Source: Guillardia theta CCMP2712 (taxonomy: Eukaryota > Protista > Cryptophyta). Taken from it: a stretch of 56,766 bases of DNA. Below are positions 1-56,766 of this stretch, in pieces. Below the pieces are notes generated by a model. It ran no database searches and was not told the origin of the DNA. It saw only the letters and a program-made list of their open reading frames with translations. Each line of letters opens with the position of its first letter. The stretch's first letter is position 1. The translations under genes and the position numbers were made by a program. The DNA lies in assembly GCF_000315625.1 (NCBI RefSeq), contig NW_005434665.1:1-56766 (forward strand), written 5' to 3'.

Positions 1-754
1 CGATCGTGCACGATGCTCACATGTACAGCTGTGAACTTGCGACCATCGATCGCGAAGTCCTCTCTTCCCTGCCAGAGCTTCTCCGCTTGTGCATTGCGGA
101 GGAAGGAAACAGTCACCGGGATCTCCTCAGCACTCGCTATCTCGGGTCTATACGGAGCCTTCCACATGATTGCTTTACTCTCTTGCACTGAGTCTACGAT
201 CAGTCCGATCTCTTCAAATTTCTTCTTCAGCTTTTCTTCATGGTTGACATACACCGAGGAGATCGGATGCCCAGGAGAGTCATGGAGATGAAGGAAGTCA
301 CCTCGTTGCCTGCTGAGGCGGTGTATGTCTCGACCTTCTCTTTCTTGGCTTCTTCAATCTGCTGCATAAACCACTCTCTGGACTCGGGATGCGTCACTCC
401 ATCCAGTCATCGCTTCTTGCAGAAACTCACGTCGTGCCTGCTGACATGTCGAGCGGATGGCTTCAGCGATAGCGTCGGGGGTGCATCCCTCCACAGCCTT
501 GCAAGCCTGGGCTGTCCTGCTGTTCGGATAACGCTTCGCGAAGCTCTTCACCCTCTCGACGAGATCAGCTTCGAGGACAGAGGCATCCACAAGTCCGCTC
601 TGCGTGTATTGGCATGATCTCCGATACAGCAGGTTGCGAACATTTTCATCATACTGAAGAACCATACTTAGAAAGCTATTTGAAGTATACAAACCTCTTG
701 CTTGCAGCTTCCTTGGCGCCCTGGCGGCTTCCCCTACACCTGACGAGGAGCCAT
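1..754 (-). CDS. Hypothetical intron-containing protein, 5' part (runs off the left edge)
   Basis: ATG at 754 (MAPRQ), then a plausible GT..AG intron joining in frame to YDENVRNLL... of ORF 354-692. A further open minus-strand frame continues to position 1. No family recognised. Confidence 0.5.
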
Positions 755-755
755 G

Positions 756-1077
756 CTGCCGAAAATAACGGCGCCTGCCGAAAATAACGGCGCCTGCCGA
801 AAATAACGGCGCCTGCCGAAAATAACGGCGCCTGCCGAAAATAACGGCGCCTGCCGAAAATAACGGCGCCTGCCGAAAATAACGGCGCCTGCCGAAAATA
901 ACGGCGCCTGCCGAAAATAACGGCGCCTGCCGAAAATAACGGCGCCTGCCGAAAATAACGGCGCCTGCCGAAAATAACGGCGCCTGCCGAAAATAACGGC
1001 GCCTGCCGAAAATAACGGCGCCTGCCGAAAATAACGGCGCCTTGCCGAAAATAACGGCGCCTTTAAAATAACGGCGC
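756..1077. repeat. 19-bp tandem array (CTGCCGAAAATAACGGCGC): 15 perfect + 2 degenerate units
   Basis: Period 19 from 756 to 1040, a +T variant at 1041-1060 and a degenerate unit at 1061-1077. Confidence 0.97.
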
Positions 1078-1268
1078 TGTCCTGCTGTTCGGATAACGCT
1101 TCGCGAAGCTCTTCACTACAGCAGGTTGCGAACATTTTCATCATACTGAAGAACCATACTTAGAAAGCTATTTGAAGTATACAAACCTCTTGCTTGCAGC
1201 TTCCTTGGCGCCCTGGCGGCTTCCCCTACACCTGACGAGGAGCCATGCTGCCGAAAATAACGGCGCCT
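1076..1268 (-). pseudogene. Internally deleted duplicate of the 5' end of the neighbouring gene
   Basis: 1076-1116 = 511-551 and 1117-1268 = 625-776, identical as read. The junction creates stops immediately after ...VRNLL. Confidence 0.85.
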
Positions 1269-1333
1269 CCTAAACCCTAAACCCTAAACCCTAAACCAGG
1301 CTATCCGAGGCTAACTAAACCCTGAACTAAACC
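1269..1333. repeat. Interstitial telomeric tract (CCCTAAA)~4 plus degenerate copies
   Basis: cctaaaccctaaaccctaaaccctaaacc at 1269-1297; ctaactaaaccctgaactaaacc at 1311-1333. Confidence 0.9.
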
Positions 1334-1390
1334 GGGTACCCTGATGATACTCCTGATGATACCCGTGGATACTCGTGGCATAAGGACAAG

Positions 1391-2415
1391 ATGCACTGCT
1401 CAATGCGTAAGCGTGTCTGTATGCCGATGCTGATGTTTCATATGCTCATGCATGTCGAGCTTTCATCAAGCTTCCTCTCTTGCAAATTACCGGTCCCAAC
1501 TAGGAATTGCGTGCTCAGCCATTGCTTGGTAAAAAGAGCAAAATTTGATCGCCGACAACTACTTATGAACTACGTTACCATCGATGTAGGAAACATTAAA
1601 AAGGAACAAAGGCTTCCCATCAGCATGACAGAATCGTTTCAAAAGTGGATTCTTTCTGAAGATGAATTGAGGCCTTTCTTCAACAGGTAAAATGGGGACT
1701 TAATCGTTAAAATATGTCTGATTTTTTTCTTCGTTTTTCAAGTGCATCTTATGGAAAAGAAAGTGGTTGGGTAGATCCCTTCTCATTCGACGAGGCATGG
1801 TTGCCGACGGATCTTCCTCTCCCTCTGATGCGACCAGCTATTGGGGCCTTGACGAAGGATGGACAAGTCAAATACCTCATGCCGGCACTGGATATGTGTG
1901 TGCAGGCGGGAGGGAAACTTTGGTGGAATCGAGGCATCAACTCAGTCCCACTTGCTAAGAGATGGCTGGATGTGAATTGTGCTGATCTAAGTCGCATGTC
2001 AATCCAAGCTTTCTGCCAAGGCGGGTATGAAGATGCAAAACGAGCTGTAAAGGAGCTGGGCGATGATCACCCTGATAACGAACTTGGACCCTGGAAAAAG
2101 TTGTGGGAAGCGCCGGCAGCGAAAGGAATAGTAGAGCTTGTTGAAACCCTCTCCGATGACAAAGGTGCATGTGTAGAGAAAGGGTATCATATCATCGTCA
2201 TCCCATTGCCCGAAGAGCCTTTGCGCGAAGCTCCTGATGCTGGAAATAGACTTCGCTTATGTTTGTCTGCGGCAGGAGCTATAGACCCGTTGCAGGATGG
2301 AATAGAAACGACATACTCAGAGTTGAATGTGCTCTTCCGAGCAACCATGCCAGGGAATGAATCTGAACATATGCCACAAGTGTACAAAGAACTTTTCAAC
2401 CTTGCGGGCTCATGA
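1391..2415 (+). CDS. Hypothetical protein, possible bipartite (signal + Phe-transit) plastid presequence
   Basis: ORFs 1391-1690 and 1714-2415 are joined in frame by a GT..AG intron at ~1687-1742. Hydrophobic N-terminus ends SSS|FLS. Confidence 0.7.
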
Positions 2416-2552
2416 AGTGATCGAAGCGCAGTCAGAAGTGATGAAATTGCAGACTCACAAGTCGAGAAACTGGGAGGAATCACGCGTTTGCATGAATAAA
2501 TTGCAAAAAGTTGACTGTTAGGACATACGCAGTCTAAGCTTACACGAAAATA

Positions 2553-4150
2553 CTAGAAGACATAACGACGCCTGCCGCTTTCAAGGCGCAAGTCAGTAGA
2601 CTGATCCCCCTCGAAGTACATAAGGGACTTGTGACTTGAAGACTTGGAACGAGGAGTGAACTGAAGGTTTGATAACAAGCTGCTCAACTGCCCAAGCTGA
2701 TCCATGGCGCTGCTGCTGATGCTGCTGCTGATGCTGCTGCTGCTGCTGCTGGGCATCTTCTTGGAACCTTCCGACAAGAAGCTACTGAATTCTTGTCTGA
2801 GCGGAGCAAGTCGATCTTGACTTGTTGATGACCTTGCTGTCTCGTCTGTCGATGAATCAATCTCGTCCAATTTGAACACGTCATCTTCACCGATGTCCTG
2901 CAAGATCCGCACATCCTTCTCCGACGTAGATATCACCGACCCTGCTCTATCGTGTTCTGAAGTCACATGGCAACCATATTGAGCTTGATGACCATCTTGT
3001 AATATTGACACCATCTTTTGAGCTTCATGGAGCCGATTGATAGCCAAGCTTATCTTCGTTCTCTCGGCATTAAGACCATCCATTTGAACAAGCAGCCAAT
3101 CCAGCCAAAGCGTGCACTCCAGAGTTTTTTCTTTATCTTTGCATGTGTCATACTCTTTGCTCAACTTCAAGAGGTCTTCTTCTTTTTGACGATCCAATCG
3201 CAGCAACCTGAAACTGAAATGAGACCCCCAAAGCCGTAGAGCCTCAAACCTCCGCCAACTCACAAAGCAACTTGTGTTTGAAGTGTGGGAACATCAGTGA
3301 TCAGTTCTGGCAGCCTAGCTCTGTTGTTAAGTCGCTCTTTTCCAAGCATGTACTCGCGAATGTCGGCATTGAACGTCTCCCTGCTCTCGTTTGCTGAATG
3401 TTGCATGAAAAGGCGTCCGAATTTGACAAGGGCCATCAAACAATTGGGTCTCTCAAAAACCTGAGGGTGGTTTGAGAACTGCCACGGCAGGGCAGAGTAG
3501 AGCAGGAGGAAGAGGAGAGGCAGAGTAGAGCAGGAGGAAGAGGAGAAGCAGAATAGAGCAGGAGGGAGAGGAGAGGCAGGATAGAGCAGGAGGAAGAGGG
3601 CAGGCAGAATAGAGCAGGAGGAAGAGGAGAGGCAGAGTAGAGCAGGACGAAGAGGGCAGGCAGAGTAGAGCAGGAGGAAGAGGAGAGGCAGAATAGAGCA
3701 GGAGGAAGGTCCCTTGCTTGCCTTGGAGGAAAGGAAGTCGTATCTGAGGTGGCTCTCGGAGTCTAAACTTTCAAGAGAAAAGAATTGCTTCAACAATTTC
3801 ACTTGGTTCAACATTTTCTGATCCTTGCAGAAAATTTCATAGAGCTAATCTGAATCACCAAGCGATGAAAGAAGTCAATAGTCTCTTGGAGAGGAGCAGA
3901 GCCATGGGATCAATCAATTCAGCCGACGAATATCCGACGAATATCCGAAGGCACTTGAAACCATGGCAGTCCGGCATGCGTATGCTAGCCAAAAGAAAAG
4001 GTACGAAAAATTCGTAGAGGTGATCCAACCCTCGCACTCTTCTGTACGTGTTCTAGCAAGCCACCAAACAACGCTGGAGGATCAAAAAAAAATATTCTCG
4101 TAGGTCCCTTTCACAAGGTCAAAGGCGAGCACAGCATCCCCGCACATGCT
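2553..4150 (-). CDS. Hypothetical coiled-coil protein (multi-exon; start approximate)
   Basis: Adjacent minus ORFs 2553-3263, 3260-3814 and 3855-4037. The repeat block at 3480-3721 fits an in-frame GC..AG intron. Confidence 0.55.
3487..3708. repeat. Degenerate ~27-32 bp purine-rich minisatellite (GGCAGAGTAGAGCAGGAGGAAGAGGAGA-like), intronic
   Basis: About 7-8 imperfect units visible. Confidence 0.85.
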
Positions 4151-4324: not shown

Positions 4325-5545
4325 ATGCCCTTTGCCTCTTTCATCCATAGGGATGAGAGTGTGGCCCAGCAAGTTATCCAAGAGATGCTGCCGATGCAAG
4401 ACATTCACGACGTTCTCAACGATTTGCATTCGTCACAGAGCAGCAACGAACAGGAAATGAGAATGCACATCCTTCAGCTCAGGACGATGATGAAGAGTCT
4501 CATAAACATGGCAGAAGTGGCATGCCATGAAGTTGAGAGGCGTTGCCAAGCTCTGCATGATCTGCGGAGTTCAACCTCAGCAGATTCAATAACAAACAAA
4601 AGTTTTCAGAACAAGGATGAAGGCGAACGACATGTTTACGACCCTGAAGTTTCAGAATTATTTCCCAACTTCATCTCCTTCAACTCAGATTCAAGTCCTA
4701 TACCCTACCTGCAAACTATTCAGAGTCTCGTTCGATCCAACCAGCTCGGAGAACACTGGGACCTTCTGCAGGACAATGTGAAGCGAAGAGGATTCAATAC
4801 GACTATAGGAATTCGCCTTGCAATGAACTCGAATGCGGCCGATCTCAGGCCTCTTCAAGTGCAGCTAGTAATTCCAGGTAGCCCCGCTCATGTCTGTGGT
4901 ATGCTAGATCGAGGAGATGAGATTGTCGCTGTGGACGGCGAAAGTGCATCGGAGGCGACGATCGTGAGCCAAGTGAGTGGAACTGACGTGGTTGGCTCGA
5001 GAGTGACGCTCACTATCAAGAAGAAGGGATCTGACCGAACGTTTGACATCCCTCTGGTCAGGGTTTCATGGAGTGTCGTTGAAGCGAAGGAAAAGATTTT
5101 TATACTGATGGAGCAATTGATGAAGCAGATCAGTCAAGATGGGTCCAAGAGGATCTCTCAGGAATATCTTTCCCTCTTGTACACAGAAATGAAAGAGTAC
5201 GAGAAATTCCGTGCTATCAACGAGATGCACGTCCAGGATCGCTTGTACGAGCTAAGGTCTTCTATTCTGCAGCTGGCTCAAGAAGCGTTGGAGCATTCTG
5301 AAACAATAATTCGAGTATATAATCGGGCTTTGATGCTTTTAGGTAAGAACAAGCAAGAAGTCTTCAGAGACCGTGAAACATATCTGAAGGCTCAAGTCAG
5401 AGAGCGCGAGAATAGGTTGGGTACAATGAATATGGAGAACGAAGCTTTGAAGCAAAGATTACAGAAATCTGATAAGCTGCTGCTGGGTATGGAGAAAATG
5501 TGTCAAATTGCTTTTCGAAAGAAAGGAGCAATGGAGAATTCATGA
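4325..5545 (+). CDS. PDZ-domain and coiled-coil protein
   Basis: 406-aa ORF. IGIRL...VIPGSPAHVCGMLDRGDEIVAVDG...GSRVTLTIKK is a PDZ signature. Confidence 0.85.
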   Translation: MPFASFIHRDESVAQQVIQEMLPMQDIHDVLNDLHSSQSSNEQEMRMHILQLRTMMKSLINMAEVACHEVERRCQALHDLRSSTSADSITNKSFQNKDEGERHVYDPEVSELFPNFISFNSDSSPIPYLQTIQSLVRSNQLGEHWDLLQDNVKRRGFNTTIGIRLAMNSNAADLRPLQVQLVIPGSPAHVCGMLDRGDEIVAVDGESASEATIVSQVSGTDVVGSRVTLTIKKKGSDRTFDIPLVRVSWSVVEAKEKIFILMEQLMKQISQDGSKRISQEYLSLLYTEMKEYEKFRAINEMHVQDRLYELRSSILQLAQEALEHSETIIRVYNRALMLLGKNKQEVFRDRETYLKAQVRERENRLGTMNMENEALKQRLQKSDKLLLGMEKMCQIAFRKKGAMENS

Positions 5546-5589: not shown

Positions 5590-6618
5590 TTGATCATTTA
5601 TTGGCTCCATGACAAGACATCATGTCATCTCTTTCTGTACAAATTGATGAATACTGACGAGTTGATAAAGTCACTGTTCAAATTGGCAGGAGTTATCTTG
5701 CTAATCTGTTGGAACTTCTTCTTAAGCCAGAAGAAAAATTTCTCTTCGTCTAAGCCTCTTTTGAAACAAAGCGAGTTACGAACGTTTAAAATGAATGTGC
5801 AATGATCAACCTGGGCTTGTATGCGAGAATCAGAGTACCCTCCGGTGAGAGGAGTTTGTCTATCGTTTCGATAAGCGGTTTGAATAATCCCTTATTGTAA
5901 ACAACTGCCAACAAATAATCACATCACCCGAACAGTGGAAGATAGACAAAACGATTTTACCGTCGGACCCAACGACAAGATCAAAAGATGACGCTTCAAA
6001 CGATTCTATATCATTTGTTCCCCATCCTAATTGTTTGACGTCTACACACTGGGAGGAGTTGTCTCCTCGCACATTGTGGTCAACATTCACACGTGCCAAC
6101 TTTAGTACACGCTCATCATAATCTGTTGCTGTCACTTTTCTCGCTCCAAATCTTGCGCAGACGACTGAAACAAGTGCATGTCCTGCTCCTAATTCTAGCA
6201 CGTGCTTTCCTCTCACAAGCTCAGGATTCTTTGCAAGGTACTCAGATAGCAGAATAGCGGCATCCCATACAGCTGCTCCCGTCCATTTCAAGCCCGTAGG
6301 TTCCGGCTCATCATCTGCACGCTCGTCCCAGCTTTGCCGTATCATAAAGCTTTCACCATCGATAAGAACAGGACGAACTTTCAATCTGAAATTGTCTGCA
6401 TATGGATTCGTATTCGAGAACGGAACCAAAGAAGTGCTTAATGCGATGGCATTTGGATTTGGATCTTGCATTGCAAAGTACAAGACTAAAAATTGAATCG
6501 AATGTTTGAAACAGATACTAGTCATGGGCTGCAGATTTCATATTCCAGGCTTCAGAGCCAGCAACATCTGCAGTTACCTCGCCATCGCCATCCCTACCTG
6601 CGCCACACTGGCGGCCAT
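5590..6618 (-). CDS. METTL21/family-16 SAM-dependent protein lysine methyltransferase (ends approximate)
   Basis: TGAAVWDAAILL, VLELGAG, VTATDY, LGWG and DLVVGSD|VVY (across an intron) motifs. Confidence 0.9.
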
Positions 6619-10899: not shown

Positions 10900-12147
10900 C
10901 TGCATAAAAGGTTTCGTGTTGCATGAATAATTCAAATAAAAGCTCACAACTCATACTTTCTTCTAAGCATGTGATTCACATGGACGAATGCACATAACAC
11001 CGATTCCTGTTCATTGTGAGGTTCCACAGACAAAAATCAAGATTAAAATTCACCTCTTCGAAAAGGTTGTTGATGTCTGACATTCTGTTCTAGGTGAAGG
11101 TGTTTGCGATGGTGATTCCCTCCATCACCTCCAAGAATTTCCTGCAACAATTTAATCATCGAAAAACTGGATTAAACAAAATTTTGATCACCTGTGCTCG
11201 TTGTCGTATGCATGCCATATCCATGTAATGTAGAGGTTGCGTCGCTTTACAACGAGCTGTGGAAATACATGCTCTGTGGCAAAAGTGCACAGTCAGCGCA
11301 TTGTAACCGCCTAACTTAGACAACGTAGACTGTGAAAGTAAAAATGATTGATATGCTGGTGGTTCGAATACTGTCGCCTGTATGCGAGCCTGCAAAAATG
11401 TTTGAGACAAGGGCGGACAAAAAAATGCTGATTAAAAGCCTACCACTGGAGCAACACGGTTTGCTCTATCTACAGATCTCATATTTTTATGAAAATACAA
11501 GACTTTGGCAGGCCTGCGCATGTGATTCGTTAGAACATTTGGAATAACACAAAGCTCTAACCGTTTGGGATGGTATAAATGTGATGGCATAGTCTCCATT
11601 GTCTGTTGGATACTCATGAGAATACTGAAACTTATTCACAAGCTAACCGATCGGTGTGTATTCGCTCTCAACGCACTGAGTTGGGTGCAAATCACATATA
11701 CACAGGAACTATAGAACAAAGATAAAAAAGGCATTACCTTTGTGTCCCCATGTTTGATGCATGCTCCTTGTATCGTCTTTCCTGCCACTCAAGCTTTACA
11801 ACCTCGACTTGTTGGAGAAGGCAGGAAATTTTCACAAACCGTCTGGATGGTTTTAGGTTCAAAAGGAGATTTTAGATTGAGATTTAGCTTTGATATCAGA
11901 GGTAAAATCGTATGAAGCGCTGAAGACGAGTCTTGGCCGATATTTTGCACATTGCTTGGAGTGAAATTAGGAAATGAATTTCTAGAAAAACGCTGAACCT
12001 TTCGTCCACTGAGTCATCGGTGGTGGAAGGAGAGGAGAGCTCGTCATCAAACCTATCATATCTGCTCATTCTCTCTTCCGCCAGTCCGCTCTGACAAGGT
12101 CGGTGAACTTCATCCATTTCCAGCCCTCCTACAAACAGACGCGGCAT
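10900..12147 (-). CDS. Hypothetical multi-exon protein (3' end uncertain)
   Basis: MPRLFVGG... from 12147, followed by a chain of short minus-strand frames with splice-like signals. No family recognised. Confidence 0.45.
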
Positions 12148-12290: not shown

Positions 12291-13256
12291 ATGCTGCGAT
12301 CAGCCGTGGCCGCCATGTCGCGCGTCTGCGCTCGCCGTGGGGGATCCTATCCCTCGCTCTCGCGTGCTCAATATCTTACCCATGCTATCTCCTCCAAAAG
12401 CTATGCTGCTCTTCTGCTCCCCCTGCCGGGCTGCAGAACATTGTCTCGAGGACTCGCCACAGGTCCTGGTAACGACAAGCCGACGAGTGATGAGAGGAAG
12501 TCTGCGTCTCAGAATGAACCTCTGCCGAAGATGTCACAGATGAGGAAGACAGTCGTTGCGAAGGGTTCCGACAGATTGTCCAAAAAAAGACCGCAATATG
12601 ATCCGGTAAGACTTGATGCGCATATAGTTTTGTGGCTTACACCAGGGTGGTGCAGGAAATCCTCAAAGCCCTGGAAATAGATCACATTCCTGCCCACATG
12701 ATAGAAGAAACTCTACAAGGAGAATGCATGTCGCTAGAGGATCTCAAGTCTCTTGTTGATGCCGGCTTTCATCAAGGTCTTAGTGATCCGCAGCCTGATC
12801 CACAGCCAACATCGCAGTCAACCGAAGAATGGAGTGAAGATCTTGTTCAACAGCTGAATCCAAAGCGCATGTTCTATCCAGGACAGAGATACAGCCCAGA
12901 GGATCTCTCTCCTCACACTCGCGTCGACTACAGCAAGATTCGAGAGGAAAAGAAGCAAAAAGGTTGTCCTCTTGGAGGAAAAAAAGGACCAAAGATTGAT
13001 TTCACCAACGTCGCCCTGCTCTCAAGGTTTGTCCATATTCTTTGCATTCTTTTTGGTTTTGATAGAGTTTACTCTTCTATACAGATTCCTCACTGATGGT
13101 GGCAAGATCATGCCGCGCAGGAAGACGTTCGTATGCGCAAAGAAGCAGCGAGAACTAGCTCGTTGCGTGAAGCGCGCTCGACAGATGAATCTTATCCCAT
13201 ACATGGGTAAGCTACCTCAGTTTAGGAGACCTGATTTTTTTGCGGAAAATGCTTGA
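12291..13256 (+). CDS. MRPS18: Mitochondrial ribosomal protein bS18 with N-terminal presequence/extension
   Basis: CPL...[12 protein letters not shown]|[38 protein letters not shown]. Arg/Ser/Ala-rich N-terminus; two short introns. Confidence 0.9.
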
Positions 13257-18719: not shown

Positions 18720-19053
18720 AAGCAGGTCACCAGCAGTGTTACCGAAGTCCATTCCAAGACCAAGGAGGCGTCGGCTCCATCTACTCCCGTGATTGCAGGC
18801 GGTATGTTCGATGGCACACTCAAGCATGTGTAGGTTGTGCAGGAGCAGCCGAAACGGAACATGGTGTTTGGAGGAGGTCATGCGCGTCTGTGAATGCGGG
18901 ATGGAAATGACAGTCATGCAGGAGCTGGAGGCCTGGTGGAGGATGACTGAATAAAGGCTGGAGGAGCACAACAATGCTGTAGCTGCTTGATGAACAATCC
19001 AATCCGTCTCTTGCCTAAATATAACCCTCCTGCTCTACCGCTCTGCGTCTCCT

Positions 19054-42163: not shown

Positions 42164-42205
<42 letters not shown>

Positions 42206-44503: not shown

Positions 44504-44576
<73 letters not shown>

Positions 44577-44737
44577 GGCAGCAGCAGCCGCAGCAGCCCG
44601 CAGCAGCCCGCAGCAGCAGCAAGTGAAGGAAAGACGAAGTGCAGGAGCAGGGGCAGGAAGAAGTGCAGCAGCAGCAGCAGCAGCACAAAGTGAAAGAAAG
44701 ACGAGGAGCAGGAGGACGAGCAGGAGGAGGAAGAAGT

Positions 44738-44821
<84 letters not shown>

Positions 44822-46650
44822 GGAAGAGACCGTTTGGAACTCCTTCCGTCACGCACGTGGGAGCTAAGTCCAAAACCTTGATGAATGAAAGAGTGAGGTA
44901 AAACGGAGGAGAAGGAGGAGAGGAGAGGAGAGGCAGAGGCAGAGGTAGAGGCAGAGGCAGAGGCAGAGGCAGAGGCAGAGGCAGAGGCAGAGGCAGAGGC
45001 AGAGGCAGAGGCAGAGGCAGAGGCAGAGGCAGAGGCAGAGGCAGAGGCAGAGGCAGAGGCAGAGGTAGAGGCAGAGGCAGAGGCAGAGGCAGAGGCAGAG
45101 GCAGAGGCAGAGGCAGAGGCAGAGGCAGAGGCAGAGGCAGAGGCAGAGGCAGAGGCAGAGGCAGAGGCAGAGGCAGAGGCAGAGGCAGAGGCAGAGGGAG
45201 GAGGGGGGAGGGTAGGAGGCAGGAGGCACAAGATTATGAGGAGGAAGAAGGGAGGAGGATTCAGTTAAGATAGCTCTATTTTCACCTCCTTTGTCAGCCT
45301 TGCAACCCTGATGATGTGAGTCAACAACAGTGAATGTCGCCAGCGCGCTCCCTCCTCCCCTTCCCTCCTCTGCTCTCCTCCTCCCCCCCGCCCTCGGAAC
45401 CCCCACCTGCTCTACCTCGTGCTCTCTTTCTTTGTGAACGCAATTGCGGCAGCAACAGCGTAAACCCCCGCGATCCCCGTCAAGAAAGTAGAAGTTCTGC
45501 CAAGGCGTAAGAAGATTCTCAGAGCAATGAAACATGGATAGATTCTGAATCTCTTTCCCCCCCTCCTCCTCATCCTCTTCTCTCTTCTCTTCTCTCTCCC
45601 CCCATCTTCTCCCCTCTCCTCTTTCCTTGCTCTTCTCCTCCCCTCTCTTTCCTCACCTCAACGACTTTCCTGGAGGTTTTGACATTCTGAGAGCAGCACT
45701 GATGTAAGCTTCAGACTTGTCCAAATATTCTTGCTGCTCAGAACGAATCAAGAACCAAGCCATGATGTTGACAACATAGAACAACAGAACAAGATGTAAA
45801 GGGAGAAGCAGAGAGTGAGAAGGAGGAGGAGGAGAGAGAAAAAAGTGAGGAGGAGGAGACGGAGCAGGATGAAAGGCTGAATCTCACCTTCTGCGAGACG
45901 AGGGGACAAGTCGTCGTTGCAAGTCTCCAGTACATATAAGCAACACCAGCAGCACCTGCAAGGAAATGAAATGAGAGAGACAAAACATTCATCAGAAGCA
46001 TCACGATCATCAAAATCTGCATCGTCGTCATCACCATCACCATTATCCTCACTTCTATCACCACCACTCACAACAACTTCTCGTTCATCATCGTCATCAA
46101 TAGCAGTAGCTGCTGCACAGGCAGCAGAGGCAGAAGCAGAGGTAGCAGCAGCAGCAGCACCTGTATAAACACTTGGGTCTTTCATCTCCAACTGAAATCA
46201 AAGCATCATTTCCATCATCTAATTTTGCTCCTCTCACCAACTCACACCGCTCTCCCCACCCTTCACTTTTCAGCATGTTCTCACCCTGGTCTCCTTGCTC
46301 TCCTCTTCCTCGTTCTTCTTTCTATCTCCCTCGTTGCCCTCTCCCACCCATCCTTCCCTCCTCCCCTCCCCTCCCCTCCCACGCTGAGCGATCACCTCCC
46401 TCACCGCTGCTCGGGTCGGATAATATTTTTCCATCATGCTCGGGATCTTTGAGAGTTCTTCCGCGAACATTTTCTGGCAAACGCTGGAGTCTGCAGCAGT
46501 CGTCGATGAAGATGGCAAAAGACCAGGAAGTCACTGAACCTGTTGGGAGAGAAGGCAGCCATGTAGGAGGGTGAAATCGAAGGCTCGCAGCTTCACCTGA
46601 CATCCTGAATTCCATCTCATCGTAAGAAATGATTCTGACTTGCTCCATCG
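40724..46650 (-). CDS. LanC-like protein (LANCL2/GCR2 family), spans the assembly gap
   Basis: Spliced motifs SVYTGAAG, TFLTGIAG, ELLYGRCGY, YFGAAHGLCG, GNLPSS, VHWCHGAPG, RGLLKKGFGICHGVAGN, SLFEGFAG. Ends approximate. Confidence 0.93.
42143..42275. repeat. (GGA)n/(GCAGGA)n compound microsatellite, intronic
   Basis: Direct reading. Confidence 0.9.
43349..44222. other. Assembly gap (N run)
   Basis: Continuous Ns. Confidence 1.
44489..44820. repeat. (CAT)n and (CAG)n microsatellites, intronic
   Basis: Direct reading. Confidence 0.9.
44930..45197. repeat. (GAGGCA)n hexanucleotide array, intronic
   Basis: About 44 units; GAGGTA variants at ~44942 and ~45062. Confidence 0.95.
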
Positions 46651-47066: not shown

Positions 47067-49271
47067 ATGAACAAGGAGAGGAGGGGGAAGGAGGTGGCAG
47101 GGCTAGAGGGGAGGGTACTGGTCGACGGCTTCAAGTATGCAGACAAGCAGGTAGAGGCCTTCTTTCTCTCCCACTTCCATGGCGATCACTACGACGGCCT
47201 CTCGGAGAACTTCGATGGTCCCGGGAGGATCTACTGTACCAAGACTACAGGGGACCTGGTGGTTCAAGAGCTGAAGGTCAGGAAGGAACTGGTCGTGTGC
47301 TATGAGTATGGAGAATCTGCGCATGTATGTGGAGCTAAGGTCACCTTCCTGGACGCGAATCATTGTCCAGGAGCTGCGCTTTTGCTATTTGAGTTGGAAG
47401 ACGGTACGGTTCACTTACACACAGGGGACATGCGATATGACAAGAAGATGAAGGAGTATCCTGAGCTTGTCTGTAGGAGAGGGCTCATCGACCGCGTGTA
47501 CTTGGATACTACTTACTGCCATCCCAAGCACGTGTTTCCTGGACAAGACAAGTCCATCGACATCATTGCGTCAGACGTGGTGGAGTTCTTGCAGAAGGGA
47601 AGCACGCAGGATGAGCAAGAAGCAATCGATGGAGCACAAGAGAATCGAGATGGAGATGATCCAAGTCGTCGTCTTGTTCTTCTCAGTGCATACAAGATTG
47701 GCAAAGAGCGCGTGATATGCGAGGTTGCTCGAAGAGCCAAGGCGAAAGTTTACGTCGATGAAGCCAAAATGCGTGTGATGAGATGTTTGAGAATGTCTGA
47801 AGAAGATCTCTCTGTCTTCACCTGCAACATGAGGGAGAGTCAAATTCACATCTGCAGGTAATTGATTGGTTCCTTTCCTCTCCTCTTTCTTCGCGCTTTC
47901 CTTCGCTACCTTGCCCTAGGTTGATGTGATTAACAGGATGGGATTTGCGGGGGATATTTGGCCATTTTTCCGTCCAAACTTTGTGAATATCGAGCGGTAC
48001 ATCAAAGACAACGATCTTCCCTTCACTTCCTGCATGGCATTCATTCCCACGGTGAGCAAATGCAGAGAAAGGAGATATGTGGCTCGAGGTTCACAGAGAA
48101 ATACAAGGTTGAAAATAAGAATGGTACGCTCGATGAGAGGAGTTGATATCGTTAGACGAGGATTGTATTGATTTCAGCCTCCACCCTCACGTCAACCCCA
48201 ATGTTGAGATTCGTTGACAGGGTTGGGCTGATAGCAGCAACTACAACAAGAAGAATTCGTTGCAATTCAAGGGGAACTTTTCTGTCAAGTGTGTCCCATA
48301 CAGCGAGCACTCAAATTACAATGAACTCGTCGAATTTGTTGAATTCCTAAGGTCTAGCATTATCAGTATTCCTCCTCCATCACTCTCCTCCTCCTCCTCC
48401 TCCTCACTCTCCTCCTCCTCCTCCCTCTGCTCCTTCTCCTCTTCCTCTTCCTCCTCCTCCTCCTCCTCCTCCTCCTCCTCCTCCTCGCCTCCTCCTCCTC
48501 GCCTCCTTTTTTCCCCCCCCCCCCCCCCCTCTCCCCCCCCCCTCTTCTCAACCTCCACCTTTTCTCTCCCTCCTCCTCGTCCTCGTCCTCGTCCTCCTCG
48601 TCCTCGCCCTCCTCCTCCTTTCCTCTCTCATCTTTCTTCATCCCTGCACCAACATCCTTGCACGTGTATTCTTCTGCTGACCTCCTCAACAGACCGAGGA
48701 ACGTGTTCCCAACCGTCTTCACTGATGAGAAGGTGAGAAGAGGAGGAGGAATCGCCTGCTGGTTCTCCTTATATCTTCTCAGGCACGCCGGACAATGATC
48801 TCCAGGTTCTCTCGCTATGTCGACAGCAACGCCGTGAAGAAAGCGTTCGTCACCTCGATGTTTGCGGGAGCTGGAGGCAAAGTCAAGGACGAGAGCGGGA
48901 AGGGGAAGGAGGACAGGGGGAAGAAGGAGGTGAAGAGAGCAGCGAACCGGGTGAAGGAGGAGAGATCGGAAGGGAGGAGACTCACGTTGGTCAAGGAGGA
49001 GGCAGTTTTTAGCAGTTGCGACGTGATTGACTTGTGCGGCGACGACTCGTCCAGTGGAGGGGAGGAGATGAAGGTCAGTGAGGTGAAGGTGGAGGTGAAG
49101 GAAGAGGAGGGGGTGGGGGAGGGGGAGGGGGAGGGAGATGCTGTCAAGCGAAGCGACGGAGCAAGAGGGTCGAGGAAGAGACTACAAGTAATCGACGTGC
49201 CTGAGAAGAAGAAGCAGAAGCAACAGCAGACGCTGTCTACCTTCTTCTCACCTGCTGGAGTGAGGGATTGA
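47067..49271 (+). CDS. SNM1A/PSO2-like DNA cross-link repair nuclease (metallo-beta-lactamase/beta-CASP)
   Basis: FLSHFHGDHYDGL, DANHCPGA, HTGDMR, YLDTTYC, YKIGKE, VPYSEHS. The true start may lie slightly upstream. Confidence 0.94.
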
Positions 49272-49538: not shown

Positions 49539-50513
49539 TCAGTCTTCGGGGGTGATGACCACAGGATCGCCGGGGCGCCACATGGCGGGCATCTCCGGCA
49601 TGGTCACAGCACAGTTGAAGTTCTCGTCGAGGTCCCCGAGCACTTGAATGTTCTTCTCCTTCCACGAGCTCTCCTTGATGCACATGGAGAAGGGCTGGAT
49701 CACGAACTGCTTCTTGCGGGGCCTCGCAGGCTCCTTCATCACCTCGTCCTCCTTGTCCTCCGCGTCGGCTTCACTCTTCTCCTGCTCGGCGTCCTGCAGC
49801 GGGTAATTCCAGATCTTGAGCATCTTCTCCTCCATCTCATCCTCGGGCGACTGTCGCTTCCCCAGGTTGGTGTCCACCTGGCTGGCTGCCATCGCCTCCG
49901 ACAAGTCCAGCTGTATCACTGCCGAGCTGCTCTGAACCGGCTCTCGCTCCACCCGTTTCGGCCGAACGGCGGAGAAAAGGCGACTGCGGGCCATGACATC
50001 GGAGTGAGGAGCGGGAGGAAGCGCTCCGACGAGAGGCGTGTTGGGCTCCCAGCCCTCCTGCGCCGAGGAGGTGTAGCTGATGACATGCGCGTACTTGATC
50101 AGATCCTCCACCTCCACTTCCACCACCCTCTCAGTGTTCGAAGAAGTCTTAAGGGCCTCCTGCAGGACCCCAGCTGCATCCTTGAGGCTTCGACCGAACG
50201 TCTTGAGCGCTGCATCGCTGTCATCGATCTTGGACTTGACATCGTCGATCTTCTTCTTCACTTCGACAATCTTGTTCAGCTCCGCGACGTTTTCTCGCAG
50301 CTCCACCTGGAACGAGCAGAGCAAGTGGAGGAGCCCGTCGCGCTGATTCGTGAGCGACTCAAATTTCTCCACTTCTTCCTTGGCTGTCTTCGACGTGTGC
50401 TGCAGGTTTCGGAAGATTTCTTTGGCCACATCTCTCATCTTCGTCAAGTTTGAAACAGCACGAGCCTTTAGGTTAGTTCTAACGTTCTGTAGCGCGCTAG
50501 GTTGTCCCGACAT
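49539..50513 (-). CDS. MED4: Mediator subunit 4
   Basis: Coiled coil followed by LIKYAHVISYT...GALPPAP...MARSRLF, and a plant-like C-terminal PAMWRPGDPV. Confidence 0.82.
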   Translation of the reverse strand: MSGQPSALQNVRTNLKARAVSNLTKMRDVAKEIFRNLQHTSKTAKEEVEKFESLTNQRDGLLHLLCSFQVELRENVAELNKIVEVKKKIDDVKSKIDDSDAALKTFGRSLKDAAGVLQEALKTSSNTERVVEVEVEDLIKYAHVISYTSSAQEGWEPNTPLVGALPPAPHSDVMARSRLFSAVRPKRVEREPVQSSSAVIQLDLSEAMAASQVDTNLGKRQSPEDEMEEKMLKIWNYPLQDAEQEKSEADAEDKEDEVMKEPARPRKKQFVIQPFSMCIKESSWKEKNIQVLGDLDENFNCAVTMPEMPAMWRPGDPVVITPED

Positions 50514-52130: not shown

Positions 52131-52606
52131 CTTGCCGATCGGTTGAAAATGCTCGATCGAATTTCCAATGAGCATCTTCAGCAGCTGCTTCAACTTCGCC
52201 TTCCTCTTTCCTCGTCTCGTCCTCCCTTGCACACATACACACTCCTCAACCCGATCCTTCTTGACATCTCTACGTCCCCCGTTGCATTGTCATGTGCTCC
52301 CTGGACGCTTTTTTTCAGTCTTGGTACTCTTTTCTTGCTCACAAAAACCTCTATTTCCCTGCTCCATATGCCCCTCATGCTCTCAATAGCAACATAACCG
52401 AATATAGCATCTTCTATCTCTTTGCCCCTCCTTTTCATCATCTCACTGGCAACATACACTGGAGCACTATTCATTTTAGCTTTCCTGCCAACTTTCTCCA
52501 GCACAAGAGAAAAATTGTGAAAATGTGTTTGTATACTAAACTGATGGCAGAGCTCGTCCTCTCGATGAACCTACCGCTCAAGAATTAGACTTGATAGCGC
52601 GAAACA

Positions 52607-53680
52607 TGTCCTCTCGTGGTAGAACTCAACCAAAAGAAAAGCACAAGGTAGAGGAGCGGGAGCGAGGGTTCGAAGTTCGTTCTGCGCCAGGTCAGACTTT
52701 GCCCTTGCTGAGGGTGTGGAGATGTGGAAAGTGTTTTGACTGCTGTAAACAGCTCCTCTGCCTCGTTACGATGCTCTCCGCGACACAAACTTGCGGCAAT
52801 ACTTCGAATCCAAGACAGTGCAGAAGTACTTGCAGAAGATGGGATGGGTAGACAAGGAGGGAAAGATTGTCGATCTTGACAAATTCCGGTGAGGGTGTGG
52901 ACACATGTTGGCTGGTAGTCGCTGAGAGAGATGGCAGGGGAAAACTTAACATAATCGAACAAGAGTTCAAGTATGCAGAGAAAACTGAGTTCTGGCGGCT
53001 GAAGGAGGAGGAGGAGATGCGTCGAACTCACCAGGCGAGGAGGGAGCGAGCGCTAGAGGAGGCGAAGAAGTTGGAGAGAGCCAACAGAATCCGAGAGGAG
53101 AACAGGATACGACGAGGAATAATCTCCGCTGTCAAGAACCAATCTTCGCACGAGCTCAAGAAGCTGACCCACGACATGTCAGTCATCTTCCTCCTCCTCC
53201 ACCTCCCCTCCTCCTCCACCACCACCACCACCTCCTCCTCCTCCTCATCATCATCATCATCACCATCTTTCCTCCCCTCTCCTCGCTCCATGTCCCTTCG
53301 TCCGTTCCTCTTTTTGACCCTCTTCCTCCTCTCCTTCTCTGCTTCTCTCCTCCTCCTCTGCCTTCTCTTTCTGATTCTCTCTTCTATCACAGCGGGAAGA
53401 CCAAGGTTGTTGAGAGCGGCAAGGACGAGCAGGAGAAGGAGGGAAGGAGGGAGCAGGAGCAGGAGAAGGAGAAGGAGGGATATGACGAGGACTTCTCGCC
53501 AGAGGAAGACGTCCACGAGGACACGGAGGAGGCAGACGAGGCTGGCGGATTCTTTGTTACTCAGCATCCGGGTGACTGAACGGAGAGAGAGAGGGAGGAG
53601 GAGGAGAAGCAGCAGCAGCAGCAGCTGAAGGAAGAGCAGGAGCGGAAGGAGGGGAGGAGGTGCGGAAAGAATCAACTAGT
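52607..53680 (+). CDS. Coiled-coil protein with ERICH3-N-terminal-like motif (likely ciliary)
   Basis: YDALRDTNLRQYFESKTVQKYLQKMGWVDKEGKIVD followed by a charged helix. Family resemblance is from memory. Confidence 0.6.
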
Positions 53681-54035
53681 TTTAATTGACGTATCTTCAC
53701 CTCTTTCCCCCGCCATCTCCGTCGCCTGCAGTCGCTGCTTCCTACCCACCTCCTGCAACTCCAAGGCCGAAGGACCCGTCTTGCTTCCCTTGACCAAGGG
53801 GGACGAATCTTGAGGATGGATTAGCACGGTACCTCAGAGCAAGTTTACAACCTCTTCGTCCTCCTCCTCTGCTCTGCTCCTGTTTCAGACTCACACTCCT
53901 CGTCAAGCGCTGTACTGCCTCCACCTGTTGTCATGCTCAGAAATACCTCCTTGCTGTCCTCCTCCTCCTCCTCTCCGCAGCCCCACCCCCTTCCGTCTCT
54001 CCCTCCTGCCACAATCCTCCTCCTCCTCCTCATTG

Positions 54036-54188
54036 TCATCGTCTTCCTCCTGCTCCTCCTCCTCGTACCCCATCTGACGTCCGAACTTGAAGTCGCTCCT
54101 CCTCCGCATCCAACTCATTGGGGATCACGTTGGCAATGATGGGAATCTGTGGAAGCGATGAGAGATGTAGATGATAAGCGAGAAAACA

Positions 54189-54220
<32 letters not shown>

Positions 54221-54793
54221 AGCCAGGACGAGGACGAGGAGCAGGAGCAGGAGCAGGACGAGGACGAGGAGGAGGAGAGCAAGTAGTAGTAGTAGGAGGA
54301 GGAGGAGAGCAAGTAGGAGGAGGAGGACGAGGAGAGCGAGGAGGACGAGGAGGACTCACAGGAAATTGGTCGAGCTCAGAGAGGACCAAGAATTTGTCTT
54401 GAAAAGAGCCCAGCTGTGTCGCCTGCACCTCAACCTCGATGCTCACGCTCATGCCCGCGGCGATCTGACAGGGTGAGTAGAGGACGGACACCTGAGATAA
54501 GGAAATCAAACACGAGGAGAGGAGAGGAGAGGAGAGGAGAGGAGAGGAGAGGAGAGGAGAGGGAGAGGGGAGGGGAGGGGAGGAGAGGAGAGGAGATATG
54601 AGAGGAGCAAAGGAGGAGAGGAGGGGACGAGGAAGGGGGATGCAGATGCTCTACATTCGAGCTGCTTGGCTGGCGAATGCGGAAGCGAGAGAAATCAACT
54701 CCCGTGTTGACAACTGTCAACCTCGACCTGCTCTGAATCAGACATCCCTCCTGCTCCATCCCCTTCCCCCCATCACAAGACTCCTCCTCATCT

Positions 54794-54837
<44 letters not shown>

Positions 54838-55049
54838 ATCTTCGTCCTCGTCCTCGTCCTCGTCCTCCCCTCCTCTCTTGCCGTCCTTCCTCCCTTCCCT
54901 CTCCTCTTTCCTCTCTTCTCTCCCCTCTCCTTCCTTTCACCTGTACACGTAGCCTGCATAAAGATCTCCAAAGTCGACGAGGCCTGAGAAAATGCTTAGG
55001 GGTGAAGAAGAGTGTTGGAGGTCGAAAAGAGACAGAACAAAGCAAAACC

Positions 55050-55142
<93 letters not shown>

Positions 55143-56179
55143 AATCAGGAGGAGGAGGAGGTGATGATGGTGGTGGTGATGGTGTTGGTGGTGGTGGCAG
55201 TGATGGTTCAGGACGGGAGAGGAGGAAAGGAATTCCTACCTGGCATGCAGGTGAAAACTTTGCCTCTGGCCACTTTTTGTTTGATCGGAGCTACTGAAAA
55301 AGATGAGAAAATAGAAAGAAACGAGGGGGAACAGTACTAGGAGGAGGGATAGTTCTGGAGACGATCAGGAGGAGGAGGAGGAGGAGGAGGAGGAGGAGAA
55401 GGAGGAGGAGGAGGAGGAGGAGGAGGAAAACCTTGAGTAATTTCCGGTGTTGAGGAAGCAGAAACACGAAAAGAAGACTCAGACGTGTCTGCGATCAGCA
55501 TAAAAGGAAGGAGAGGAGAGAGAAGAACGGAAGAGTTGGAAGAGCAGAGGGGGGAAGCGAAGGACAAAGAGAGAAGAGTGGTAGTGGTGGAAGGGGAGGG
55601 AGGAGAAATGAGAGAGGAGAGAGGAGAGAGGAGAGAGGAGAGAGGAGGGAGAGAAGAGAAGAGAGAAGAGGAGTGGAGGAGGAGTGGATGATTGTGGGAG
55701 ATGAAAGGCGACAGCAGCGAGGAAGGGAACGCAAAGGGAGGAAGAGGAGGAGACCTGTATGGAGGGCAAACGTCGTCTTAAGAGAGGCCTAGAAGAAAAG
55801 TGAGCAAGGAGTACGCGCTAATGAGGGGAGGGAAGGACGATGGTGGGAGAGGAAGGAAGAGAAGGAGCGGAGAGAGGAGAGAAGAGAGAAGGAGGAGAGT
55901 AGAGAGGGGAGAGGAGAGAGGAGAGAGGAGAGAGGAGAGAGGAGAGAAGAGAGAGGAGGAGAGGAGAGAGGAGAGAGGAGAGAAGGAAGAGAGTAGAGAG
56001 GAGAGAGGAAAGAAGGAGGAGAGGAGGAAGGGAGGGGGAGAAGGCAAGTGGGGAGGAGAGGGAGGGAGGAGGGGAGGAGGGGAGGAGAGAAAGAAATTTA
56101 CAGGTGCGATGGATTGAGAAGTCACTTGCTTGTTGACATTCACTTGAGATAGAGCCTGGATGCCTAATTACTATTGCGT

Positions 56180-56225
<46 letters not shown>

Positions 56226-56766
56226 TCCTCACTGTTCCATCCTCTTCCTCCACCTCCTCTCTCCTTCCTACTCCTCTTTGAACCAGCTCTCTCCCTCCTC
56301 GTCCCTCCAGTCCTCTCCCTCCTCACCTGAGCTATGCGTGCTCGCACTGTCTGCTCGCTGGTCAAGTTCTCATCCGAGCGATCGTCGCGCACGTAGAGAG
56401 CTTCTGCCTCCTCCTCCAGCTTCTTCTTCCATGCCCTGTGCTGCTCCACTACGTTCCTGCCGTGACGTTGAGCGGGAGACGGAAGGAGGAGGAGAAGCAG
56501 TGAAGAAAGTCCATGCTGGTGGACGAGCACAAGAATGAAAAGTAGGGGTGGGACAGGAAGAAGGGGTGAGGAGGAGATGGTGGAGCAGGAGCAGGAGCAG
56601 GAGGAGATGGTGGAGCAGGAGGAGGAGGAGGAGGAGCAGAAGCAGGAGGAGGAGGAAGAGGAGGAAGAGCATACCTGACGAGGATCATTTCTCTTTTGGC
56701 TCAAGGTCGGGAACATGACAAACTTCTGGAGGCAAATTCCCATCCTCTAAGATGAGGCGTGAGAAA
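54036..56766 (-). CDS. SPAG17/PF6-like protein C-terminus with ASH/PapD-like Ig domain (5' part outside window)
   Basis: Spliced VDFGDLYAGYVYR-SRLTVVNTGVDFSRFRIRQP...VLYSPCQIAAGMSVSIEVEV resembles the SPAG17 C-terminal domain. Confidence 0.6.
55051..55142. repeat. (GAT)n microsatellite, intronic
   Basis: Direct reading. Confidence 0.95.

What the first reader, a model, noticed from the sequence alone, without database searches (positions are those of the whole stretch)
1..56766. Near-strict strand alternation: genes arranged as head-to-head pairs across the window
Seen: from 1 to 32 kb my 15 gene models run -,+,-,+ without a break. That is 14 consecutive switches; 2^-14 is about 6e-5 if orientation were independent, though four of the models are only moderately supported. 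Alternation continues through PDZ-UBA(-), RPL19(+), LanCL(-), SNM1(+) and MED4(-), and again at 51.5(-)/52.6(+)/54(-) kb. One likely exception is two minus genes at 49.5-51.5 kb, and the strand at 32.3-33 kb is unsure. Inference: transcription may be organised in obligate bidirectional-promoter units with shared convergent terminators, the opposite of dinoflagellate/kinetoplastid unidirectional blocks. I do not know whether this has already been reported for the organism.
Basis: partly seen in the sequence, partly recalled or inferred. Interest (0 to 1): 0.8.

Follow-up and report, generated by a model that had tools for sequence, protein, structure and literature searches.

The report
Alternating gene strands in Guillardia
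In this 57-kb piece of the nuclear genome of the alga Guillardia theta almost every gene lies on the opposite strand to its neighbours, a regularity stronger than in any of 64 surveyed eukaryotes and, if it holds genome-wide, an undescribed way of laying out a chromosome.

Summary
The window is Guillardia theta scaffold JH992973.1, bases 1-56766. One same-strand pair is a single LanC-like gene cut in two. The bromodomain and GNAT pieces are one GCN5-like minus gene (about 26.8-32.1 kb), so the plus gene at 28.3-29.3 kb is an antisense artefact. A small, highly expressed minus gene (32.6-33.8 kb) sits in tandem with it, so alternation is not obligate. My best count is 24 of 25 pairs. Using only well-supported genes it is 17 of 20. 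Tail-to-tail coding gaps are short (median about 200 nt) and transcripts of two such pairs appear to overlap. Head-to-head gaps are longer (median about 900 nt). In 64 eukaryotes the opposite-strand share ranges from 2 to 66%. I could not measure it genome-wide here. A second locus is consistent, and at least nine other windows of this genome carry the same unchecked note from this scan. Nine literature searches found no description. Shared promoters and co-regulation remain untested.

The parts
21..665 (-). G1, small gene model (179 aa); low confidence
   Evidence: NCBI call only; ORF 6-353(-) has a positive codon score; no Pfam hit
1625..2415 (+). G2, 244-aa gene
   Evidence: NCBI call; 234-codon ORF, correct strand in the leave-one-out codon test
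2553..3406 (-). G3, 265-aa gene
   Evidence: NCBI call; ORFs of 246 and 194 codons on the minus strand
4325..5545 (+). G4, PDZ protein, 406 aa, single exon
   Evidence: Pfam PDZ; the exact ORF is in the MMETSP transcriptome set; NCBI has a truncated model
5786..6525 (-). G5, lysine methyltransferase (Methyltransf_16)
   Evidence: Pfam E = 5e-17; NCBI call; the same convergent PDZ/methyltransferase pair lies on metagenome contig L010
8440..10645 (+). G6, EF-hand protein kinase
   Evidence: Pfam; MMETSP protein P0007 at 100% over the query and Hanusia phi orthologue P0008; both map to the plus strand by tblastn
11896..12147 (-). G7, 83-aa model; low confidence
   Evidence: NCBI only, not in MMETSP; the surrounding 159-codon ORF beats 494 of 500 shuffles; no relatives in the Atlas
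12357..13256 (+). G8, mitochondrial-type ribosomal protein S18
   Evidence: NCBI 60-aa fragment with Pfam Ribosomal_S18; the 262-aa relative P0069 maps to 12357-13253 on the plus strand
13513..14569 (-). G9, mitochondrial carrier
   Evidence: Pfam Mito_carr E = 1e-54; NCBI call
14681..18946 (+). G10, 855-aa Vps16/VIPAS39-like gene
   Evidence: NCBI call; plus-strand ORFs
19054..19505 (-). G11, 81-aa model; low confidence
   Evidence: NCBI call only; no ORF support above shuffles; no Pfam or Atlas relative
19986..20901 (+). G12, 266-aa gene
   Evidence: NCBI call; 269-codon ORF with codon score 26
21433..23969 (-). G13, GUITHDRAFT_133784 (555 aa)
   Evidence: NCBI protein P0065, Hanusia orthologue P0066 and ENA relative P0064
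24670..26608 (+). G14, Exo_endo_phos protein (504 aa)
   Evidence: Pfam; NCBI call
26788..32081 (-). G15, one GCN5-like gene (GNAT plus bromodomain)
   Evidence: RNA contigs of 5021 and 3807 nt with 10 CT..AC introns, ending at 32081. The spliced 646-aa ORF runs 31729 to 28870. Bromodomain in ORFs 26788-27525 and 27529-27765. NCBI has only an 89-aa fragment. The link from 28.9 kb down to the bromodomain is inferred.
28255..29289 (+). Spurious 345-codon plus ORF, antisense to G15 exons
   Evidence: All RNA junctions here are on the minus strand; no Pfam hit
32607..33814 (-). G16, small highly expressed gene, in tandem with G15 (the exception)
   Evidence: Two CT..AC introns; in the stranded run, 44 of the 45 reads spanning the 32767-33104 intron lie on the minus strand; NCBI 71-aa model 33134-33399; 32.1-32.5 kb is silent
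34314..34807 (+). G17, small unannotated gene
   Evidence: GT..AG intron 34460-34637, stranded reads on plus, poly(A) loose end at 34807
35040..37897 (-). G18, PDZ-UBA-type protein
   Evidence: 770-codon ORF with Pfam PDZ; Hanusia orthologue P0006 maps to the minus strand; a 3330-nt RNA contig joins it to G17
39890..40675 (+). G19, ribosomal protein L19e
   Evidence: Pfam; NCBI call
40724..43345 (-). G20, LanC-like gene, split into two NCBI models
   Evidence: NCBI calls 40724-41866 and 42996-43345; LANC_like profile positions rise toward lower coordinates
43349..44222 (.). Assembly gap (N), probably inside or just upstream of the 5' end of G20
   Evidence: profile positions 1-146 of LANC_like are unaccounted for to the left of the gap; continuity not testable here
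44308..46470 (.). Two NCBI models, 44308-45268(+) and 45265-46470(-), in microsatellite-like DNA; low confidence
   Evidence: the translations are homopolymer or dipeptide runs
47067..48798 (+). G23, SNM1/DRMBL nuclease
   Evidence: NCBI call with Pfam DRMBL; weak Lactamase_B_2 hit, E = 8e-5 and below the curated cut-off
49539..50513 (-). G24, Mediator subunit 4
   Evidence: Pfam Med4; the exact ORF is in NCBI and MMETSP
52606..53579 (+). G26, 215-aa gene
   Evidence: NCBI call; 258-codon plus ORF
53742..55246 (-). G27, PapD-like / HYDIN-type Ig protein
   Evidence: NCBI call with Pfam PF14874 and PF22544

Best explanation
Shown: this stretch of the Guillardia theta nuclear genome is a chain of genes that switch strand at almost every gene boundary. 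It reads as tight tail-to-tail pairs separated by longer head-to-head spacers. The tail-to-tail pairs have coding regions about 50-500 nt apart, and the transcripts of two pairs appear to overlap. The head-to-head spacers are about 0.1-2 kb.

Inferred: this is a property of the whole genome. It is kept by selection against co-directional neighbours. With 3' ends packed this tightly, read-through from an upstream gene would run into a downstream promoter on the same strand. A converging neighbour only meets the other gene's tail, and a diverging neighbour only shares upstream DNA. On this view the divergent spacers hold two promoters back to back, whether or not they are one shared element. Rare tandem pairs survive where a spacer of about 0.5 kb insulates them. 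Alternation is therefore a strong preference, not a rule.
For: - Public gene calls: 21 of 23 neighbouring pairs are opposite (p = 3.3e-5). One same-strand pair is a single split LanC-like gene.
- RNA: G15 is one minus gene, G16 is minus, G17 is plus. The best count is 24 of 25 (p = 7.7e-7).
- Strands of the larger genes are backed by Pfam, by G. theta transcriptome proteins and Hanusia phi orthologues, and by a leave-one-out codon test that placed 19 of 19 ORFs on the right strand.
- Spacers differ: divergent median 919 nt, convergent 206 nt, Mann-Whitney p = 0.0075.
- RNA contigs bridge convergent neighbours.
- Second G. theta locus L003, on another scaffold: the first five well-supported genes run -,+,-,+,-.
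- Baseline: the opposite-strand share in 64 eukaryotes is 2-66% (Table S1 of PMC2871058).
- At least nine other windows of this genome carry the same first-reader note. These are leads only.
Against: - No genome-wide count was possible.
- The window was picked because it looked odd, out of about 1000 windows of this genome.
- With only well-supported genes the count is 17 of 20. That is p = 0.0013 against 0.5 but p = 0.054 against the 66% of Cyanidioschyzon.
- Three small minus models that keep the alternation unbroken (G1, G7, G11) have no transcript or homologue support.
- The three ~2-kb divergent spacers (6.5-8.4, 37.9-39.9, 50.5-52.6 kb) could hide unannotated genes.
- L003 has two same-strand pairs in the raw calls.
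- The selection mechanism is inference only. No read-through, TSS or 3'-end data were obtained beyond one 6-kb stretch.
- Contigs that join two genes do not prove that transcripts overlap.
Confidence: 0.55

Rival explanations
1. Local fluke plus model bias. The genome as a whole has an ordinary share of opposite-strand neighbours (50-65%). This window, chosen because it looked regular, sits in the tail. Small antisense or ab initio models pad the alternation.
For: About 1000 windows of this genome were read. Dropping the five weak models leaves 17 of 20, which is not significantly above 66%. The public annotation misses large genes: G15, G17, and the PDZ-WW gene in L003.
Against: The public calls were not made by merging strand blocks, yet give 21 of 23. 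Even 17 of 20 has p = 0.0013 against 0.5. A second scaffold starts -,+,-,+,-. At least nine further windows drew the same remark from independent first readers.
Confidence: 0.13
2. Obligate bidirectional units. Each head-to-head spacer is one shared, co-regulating promoter and each tail-to-tail spacer is one shared terminator, so genes can only exist in such pairs.
For: The layout matches. Some head-to-head spacers are very short, 112 nt and about 210 nt. Convergent transcripts appear to overlap.
Against: A tandem pair exists and both genes are expressed. The measured divergent transcript ends are about 500 nt apart with silent DNA between them. Three head-to-head spacers are about 2 kb. No co-expression data were obtained. 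The contig depths of G16 and G17 differ 2- to 24-fold between runs, though depth is a poor measure of expression.
Confidence: 0.12
3. Mutational origin. Alternation is a by-product of how this genome rearranges or duplicates, by inverted duplications and palindromic or fold-back events, and has no transcriptional advantage.
For: Other first readers report paralogue clusters in alternating orientation and nested palindromes in this genome (unchecked). EF-hand kinase paralogues lie tail to tail in Baffinella (L007) and on the cryptophyte-like contig L005.
Against: The neighbours in this window are unrelated genes (PDZ, methyltransferase, kinase, S18, carrier, L19, LanC, SNM1, MED4), not inverted duplicates. 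Random inversions drive orientation toward 50%, not toward alternation.
Confidence: 0.1

Closest known systems
Bidirectional (head-to-head) promoter gene pairs of mammals, yeasts and diatom or eustigmatophyte algae
   Same: Adjacent genes on opposite strands with their starts less than about 1 kb apart. Seven of the eleven head-to-head spacers here are 1 kb or less.
   Different: In those genomes such pairs are a minority class on a roughly random background. The opposite-strand share was 48-66% in the organisms listed in Table S1 of PMC2871058. Here nearly every gene takes part, and sharing of a promoter is not shown.
Convergent gene pairs with overlapping 3' UTRs and bidirectional termination zones in yeast (PMC3900390; bioRxiv 10.1101/2022.11.02.514956)
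   Same: Tail-to-tail genes with very short gaps, and transcripts that appear to overlap.
   Different: In yeast this covers about 20% of genes, according to the abstract of PMC3900390 as listed. Here almost every 3' end faces another 3' end.
Unidirectional gene arrays of kinetoplastids and dinoflagellates
   Same: Gene orientation along the chromosome is strongly non-random.
   Different: It is the opposite extreme. Leishmania has 2% opposite-strand neighbours; this window has about 85-96%.
Cyanidioschyzon merolae, Monosiga brevicollis and Cryptococcus neoformans, the highest opposite-strand shares in the 64-genome survey
   Same: Fairly compact genomes with an excess of opposite-strand neighbours: 63-66%.
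   Different: That is a much weaker bias. By the NCBI calls and by my best count the window exceeds 66% (p = 0.006 and 0.0004). By the conservative count it does not (p = 0.054).

Membership tests
Bidirectional-promoter gene pair | Two adjacent genes on opposite strands, head to head | tested here: met
   Eleven head-to-head junctions
Bidirectional-promoter gene pair | Transcription start sites no more than about 1 kb apart | tested here: inconclusive
   RNA ends are known for one pair only (33814 and 34314, about 500 nt apart). Gaps between coding regions are 112-2095 nt, seven of eleven at or below 1 kb.
Bidirectional-promoter gene pair | One shared regulatory element, with co-expression of the two genes | not testable with these tools
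   Needs TSS-seq and multi-condition expression data. Contig depths are not a measure of expression.
Convergent overlapping gene pair / bidirectional termination zone | Tail-to-tail genes with a short gap | tested here: met
   Twelve tail-to-tail junctions, median 206 nt between coding regions
Convergent overlapping gene pair / bidirectional termination zone | Mature transcripts overlap at their 3' ends | tested here: inconclusive
   RNA contigs run across G17/G18 and, by length, across G15/G14. The G17 poly(A) site at 34807 is 233 nt from the G18 stop. A contig across two genes is not proof of overlapping transcripts.
Genome-wide strand alternation (the architecture proposed here) | Opposite-strand share far above the known range (over 66%) in the whole genome | not testable with these tools
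   Only about 78 kb of G. theta DNA could be fetched (the window plus L001 and L003). The window gives 85-96%. L003 gives 3 of 5 in the raw calls, and 4 of 4 among its first five well-supported genes.
Directional (polycistronic) gene clusters | Long runs of genes on one strand | tested here: not met
   The longest same-strand run is 2 genes

The most novel reading that the evidence does not exclude
The Guillardia theta nuclear genome as a whole is built as a near-regular alternation of gene strands, with 80% or more of neighbours opposite. That would lie outside the range seen in any surveyed eukaryote. It would reflect a lineage-specific way of starting and ending transcription: promoters used in both directions, and termination that depends on a converging neighbour. 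It may be strong enough that even new gene copies persist mainly in inverted orientation.
Probability: 0.45. Interest if true: 0.85.

Novelty: new variant of a known kind. Interest (0 to 1): 0.7.

Why it matters
Gene orientation is close to random in most eukaryotes. The known exceptions are one-directional arrays in kinetoplastids and dinoflagellates, which are tied to unusual transcription. A genome at the opposite extreme would be a natural experiment on several questions:
- transcriptional interference;
- promoter directionality;
- termination between converging polymerases;
- antisense or double-stranded RNA arising from overlapping 3' ends.

There are practical consequences too. It gives a strong prior for annotating cryptophyte genomes. 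Here the public annotation splits or misses several genes, and a same-strand neighbour pair may flag such an error, as it did for two of the three cases here. It also points to compact two-way promoter and terminator cassettes for cryptophyte engineering.

Tried and rejected
- **Homemade codon-usage strand caller.** It was right on long ORFs but misled by purine-rich low-complexity DNA: it preferred plus ORFs over the real minus LanC-like gene. I did not use it for counting.
- **Pfam on 40 short ORFs in the doubtful stretches.** Almost nothing was found.
- **Atlas look-ups for G7 and G11.** No relatives.
- **Exact-sequence look-ups of 20 ORFs.** Only four were on record.
- **Sampling more of the genome.** Only one G. 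theta paralogue at another locus could be reached (P0052, giving L003). The 767-aa PDZ query returned no G. theta model.
- **Relatives.** The Baffinella frigidus locus L007 holds too few genes. L004 (GCA_027487435.1, organism not identified) and L005 (a cryptophyte-like metagenome contig) have prokaryote-style ORF calls. L005 shows about 5 of 8 opposite pairs, which is not informative.
- **Promoter motif search.** All nine TACCGG sites avoid gene bodies and eight lie in head-to-head spacers. The total count is at chance level, one site falls inside the first exon of G8, and L003 does not repeat the pattern. I do not claim a motif.
- **Rfam and tRNA scans.** They found nothing in the spacers.
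- **Literature.** Nine searches found no report. The genome paper itself (Curtis et al. 2012, cited from memory) is not held.


Full report
**Identity of the window.** Exact-sequence look-ups placed two ORFs of the window on a 1,138,462-bp NCBI contig. Fetching the DNA around them showed that the window is bases 1-56766 of Guillardia theta CCMP2712 scaffold JH992973.1 (GCA_000315625.1), in the same orientation. Earlier notes of this scan also name the genome as G. theta.

**Independent gene calls.** The public NCBI/JGI models were read from three overlapping loci (L002, L008, L001). Converted to window coordinates they are:
- 21-665(-), 1625-2415(+), 2553-3406(-)
- 4325-4781(+), 5786-6345(-), 9902-10645(+)
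- 11896-12147(-), 13074-13256(+), 13513-14569(-)
- 14681-18946(+), 19054-19505(-), 19986-20901(+)
- 21433-23660(-), 24670-26608(+), 27223-28214(-), 33134-33399(-)
- 33.7-39.5 kb could not be fetched
- 39890-40675(+), 40724-41866(-), 42996-43345(-), 44308-45268(+)
- 45265-46470(-), 47067-48798(+), 49539-50513(-)
- 52606-53579(+), 53742-55246(-)

Of 23 adjacent pairs, 21 are on opposite strands (p = 3.3e-5 against 0.5). These models were not built by merging same-strand blocks, so they are free of the bias that makes alternation appear by construction.

**The two same-strand pairs in the public calls.** The first is one gene cut in two. LANC_like profile positions 147-168 lie in 42540-42965(-) and positions 213-232 in 41936-42358(-). 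The C-terminal part is in the 40724-41866 model. So one LanC-like gene runs on the minus strand from at least 43345 down to 40724. The second pair brackets 5 kb with no public model.

**RNA evidence for 28.9-34.9 kb.**
- Logan RNA contigs from three studies carry ten introns between 28959 and 30620, all CT..AC, which means minus strand. The contigs reach 32081.
- Removing the ten introns leaves a single open frame of 646 codons from 31729 to 28870 on the minus strand.
- The ORFs 27529-27765(-) and 26788-27525(-) carry the two halves of a bromodomain, and the 30.5-31.7 kb ORF has a GNAT hit.
- I read this as one GCN5-type acetyltransferase gene, about 26.8-32.08 kb, minus strand. The link below 28.9 kb is inferred from the contig length of 5021 nt and from the domain order.
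- The 345-codon plus ORF at 28255-29289 is therefore an antisense artefact.
- A small, very highly expressed minus gene occupies 32607-33814, with introns 32767-33104 and 33160-33211. In the stranded run, 44 of the 45 reads that span the first intron lie on the minus strand. This gene is in tandem with the GCN5-like gene, and 32.1-32.5 kb between them is silent. That is a real exception.
- A small unannotated plus gene follows at 34314-34807, with a GT..AG intron, plus-strand reads and a poly(A) loose end at 34807.
- After it comes the minus PDZ-UBA gene at 35040-37897. Its strand is fixed by a Hanusia phi orthologue.

**Counts.**
- Best estimate for the window: 26 genes, 25 adjacent pairs, 24 opposite (p = 7.7e-7).
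- Five models rest on the public annotation alone: 21-665; 11896-12147, whose 159-codon ORF does beat 494 of 500 shuffles; 19054-19505, which has no ORF support; and the two models in microsatellite-like DNA at 44.3-46.5 kb.
- Dropping all five gives 17 of 20 (p = 1.3e-3).
- Leaving out the pair that spans the assembly gap gives 20 of 22, 23 of 24 and 16 of 19 for the three counts.

**The assembly gap.** The gap at 43349-44222 begins 3 nt after the upstream LanC fragment. LANC_like profile positions 1-146 are not accounted for to its left. The gap therefore probably lies inside the 5' part of that gene. I had no read call left to test continuity or orientation across it. A wrong orientation of the right-hand piece would flip all strands to its right together and would not change the alternation within either side.

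**Support for individual strands.**
- Pfam domains on long ORFs: PDZ, Methyltransf_16, EF-hand with Pkinase, Mito_carr, Exo_endo_phos, L19e and Med4, plus a weak Lactamase_B_2 hit below its cut-off.
- Exact or full-identity G. theta transcriptome proteins for the PDZ gene, MED4 and the EF-hand kinase.
- Hanusia phi orthologues for three genes.
- A 262-aa relative that defines the S18 gene at 12357-13256.
- Two metagenome contigs from a 90-96% identical relative keep the order and orientation of G4/G5 and of G12-G14.

**Anatomy of the spacers.** Head-to-head gaps between coding regions are 112-2095 nt, median 919. Tail-to-tail gaps run from an overlap of a few bases to 1251 nt, median 206. The Mann-Whitney test gives p = 0.0075. 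RNA contigs bridge G17 with G18. By its length, the 5021-nt contig must also run from the GCN5-like gene into the converging Exo_endo_phos gene. That points to overlapping 3' ends, though a contig across two genes is not proof. In the one divergent pair with RNA ends, the transcripts start about 500 nt apart with silent DNA between them.

**How unusual this is.** Table S1 of PMC2871058 lists neighbour orientations for 64 eukaryotes. The opposite-strand share runs from 2% in Leishmania to 66% in Cyanidioschyzon merolae. Yeast has 56%, Thalassiosira 61% and Monosiga 65%. Against 0.66 the window gives p = 0.006 for the public calls, 0.0004 for the best count and 0.054 for the conservative count.

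**Is it genome-wide?** I could not compute this.
- One other G. theta locus was reachable, L003 on scaffold JH993003.1. Its raw calls read +,-,+,-,-,-.
- With Pfam-supported ORFs its first five clear genes read -,+,-,+,-. These are an 882-codon ORF, the EF-hand kinase, an Ephrin_rec_like protein, an abhydrolase and a PX protein. The rest is ambiguous without RNA.
- At least nine other windows of this genome carry first-reader notes of near-perfect alternation. Several further notes report paralogue clusters in alternating orientation. All of these are unchecked leads.
- So this scan has flagged the same pattern before on other DNA of this genome, and none of those notes showed a follow-up.

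**Interpretation.**
- The pattern is real here and very probably reflects a genome property. I put the odds of a genome-wide share of 75% or more at about 0.65.
- The most likely reason, in my view, is selection against co-directional neighbours in a genome whose 3' ends are packed so tightly that read-through would hit a downstream promoter. Back-to-back promoters would sit in the larger divergent spacers. This step is inferred.
- The rivals are a local fluke with padded models, truly shared promoter and terminator units, and a mutational bias toward inverted duplication.

**Literature.** Nine full-text searches, combining Guillardia or cryptophyte with bidirectional, head-to-head, convergent or divergent, strand and alternation terms, found no description. 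A 2025 chromatin preprint that uses G. theta does not comment on orientation. The 2012 genome paper is not held, so a remark in it or in its supplement cannot be excluded.

**Verdict.** The finding is a quantitatively extreme form of known head-to-head and tail-to-tail gene pairing. Its weight depends on the genome-wide count, which is a simple computation on the public GFF file.

Noticed in passing
window 26788-32081 (-): A GCN5-type histone acetyltransferase gene (GNAT plus bromodomain) with at least 10 short introns of 45-207 nt. In the public annotation it is represented only by an 89-aa bromodomain fragment. RNA contigs show the rest.
   Followed up: partly
window 32607-33814 (-): A very highly expressed small gene (71-aa public model) with a 336-nt intron. 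Separate RNA contigs (32741-33133) cover the intron, suggesting intron retention. The identity of the protein was not determined.
   Followed up: no
window 34314-34807 (+): An unannotated small spliced gene with a poly(A) site at 34807, only 233 nt from the stop codon of the converging PDZ-UBA gene.
   Followed up: partly
window 6800-7650, 38400-38850, 51600-52000: GC-rich islands full of GGCCCGG/CCGGGCC palindromes. They occur only in the three ~2-kb head-to-head spacers, apart from two overlapping sites at 35986-35989 inside the PDZ-UBA coding region. No Rfam or tRNA hit. The 96%-identical metagenome relative (L010) stops aligning at 6548, just before the first island.
   Followed up: partly
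window 1488, 6755, 7675, 7810, 12603, 34136, 38848, 46976: All nine TACCGG/CCGGTA sites avoid gene bodies and eight lie in head-to-head spacers; three are preceded by AATATGA(T). The total count is at chance level and locus L003 does not repeat the pattern.
   Followed up: partly
window 20950-21301: A 29-nt tandem repeat with 12 copies at 97% identity fills the tail-to-tail spacer between G12 and G13. The related metagenome contig L009 aligns across only part of it, which suggests a shorter array there.
   Followed up: partly
L009 and L010 (ENA, PRJEB17505 metagenome): Environmental contigs 90-96% identical in DNA to this scaffold, intergenic DNA included. They come from a close relative or another strain of G. 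theta in that sample.
   Followed up: partly
L007 10001-17892 (Baffinella frigidus) and L005 8495-13611: EF-hand kinase paralogues lie tail to tail, as an inverted pair, in another cryptophyte genome and on a cryptophyte-like metagenome contig.
   Followed up: no
window 43000-47000 and 54700-56766: Long microsatellite-like tracts (GA, GCA, CT, poly-purine) give open frames in several frames on both strands. The public models 44308-45268 and 45265-46470 lie in them and are doubtful.
   Followed up: partly
L003 3729-6932 (-) and 17752-20607 (-): On scaffold JH993003.1 an 882-codon ORF with an internal duplication and a PDZ-WW-WW gene of over 860 codons have no public gene model.
   Followed up: no
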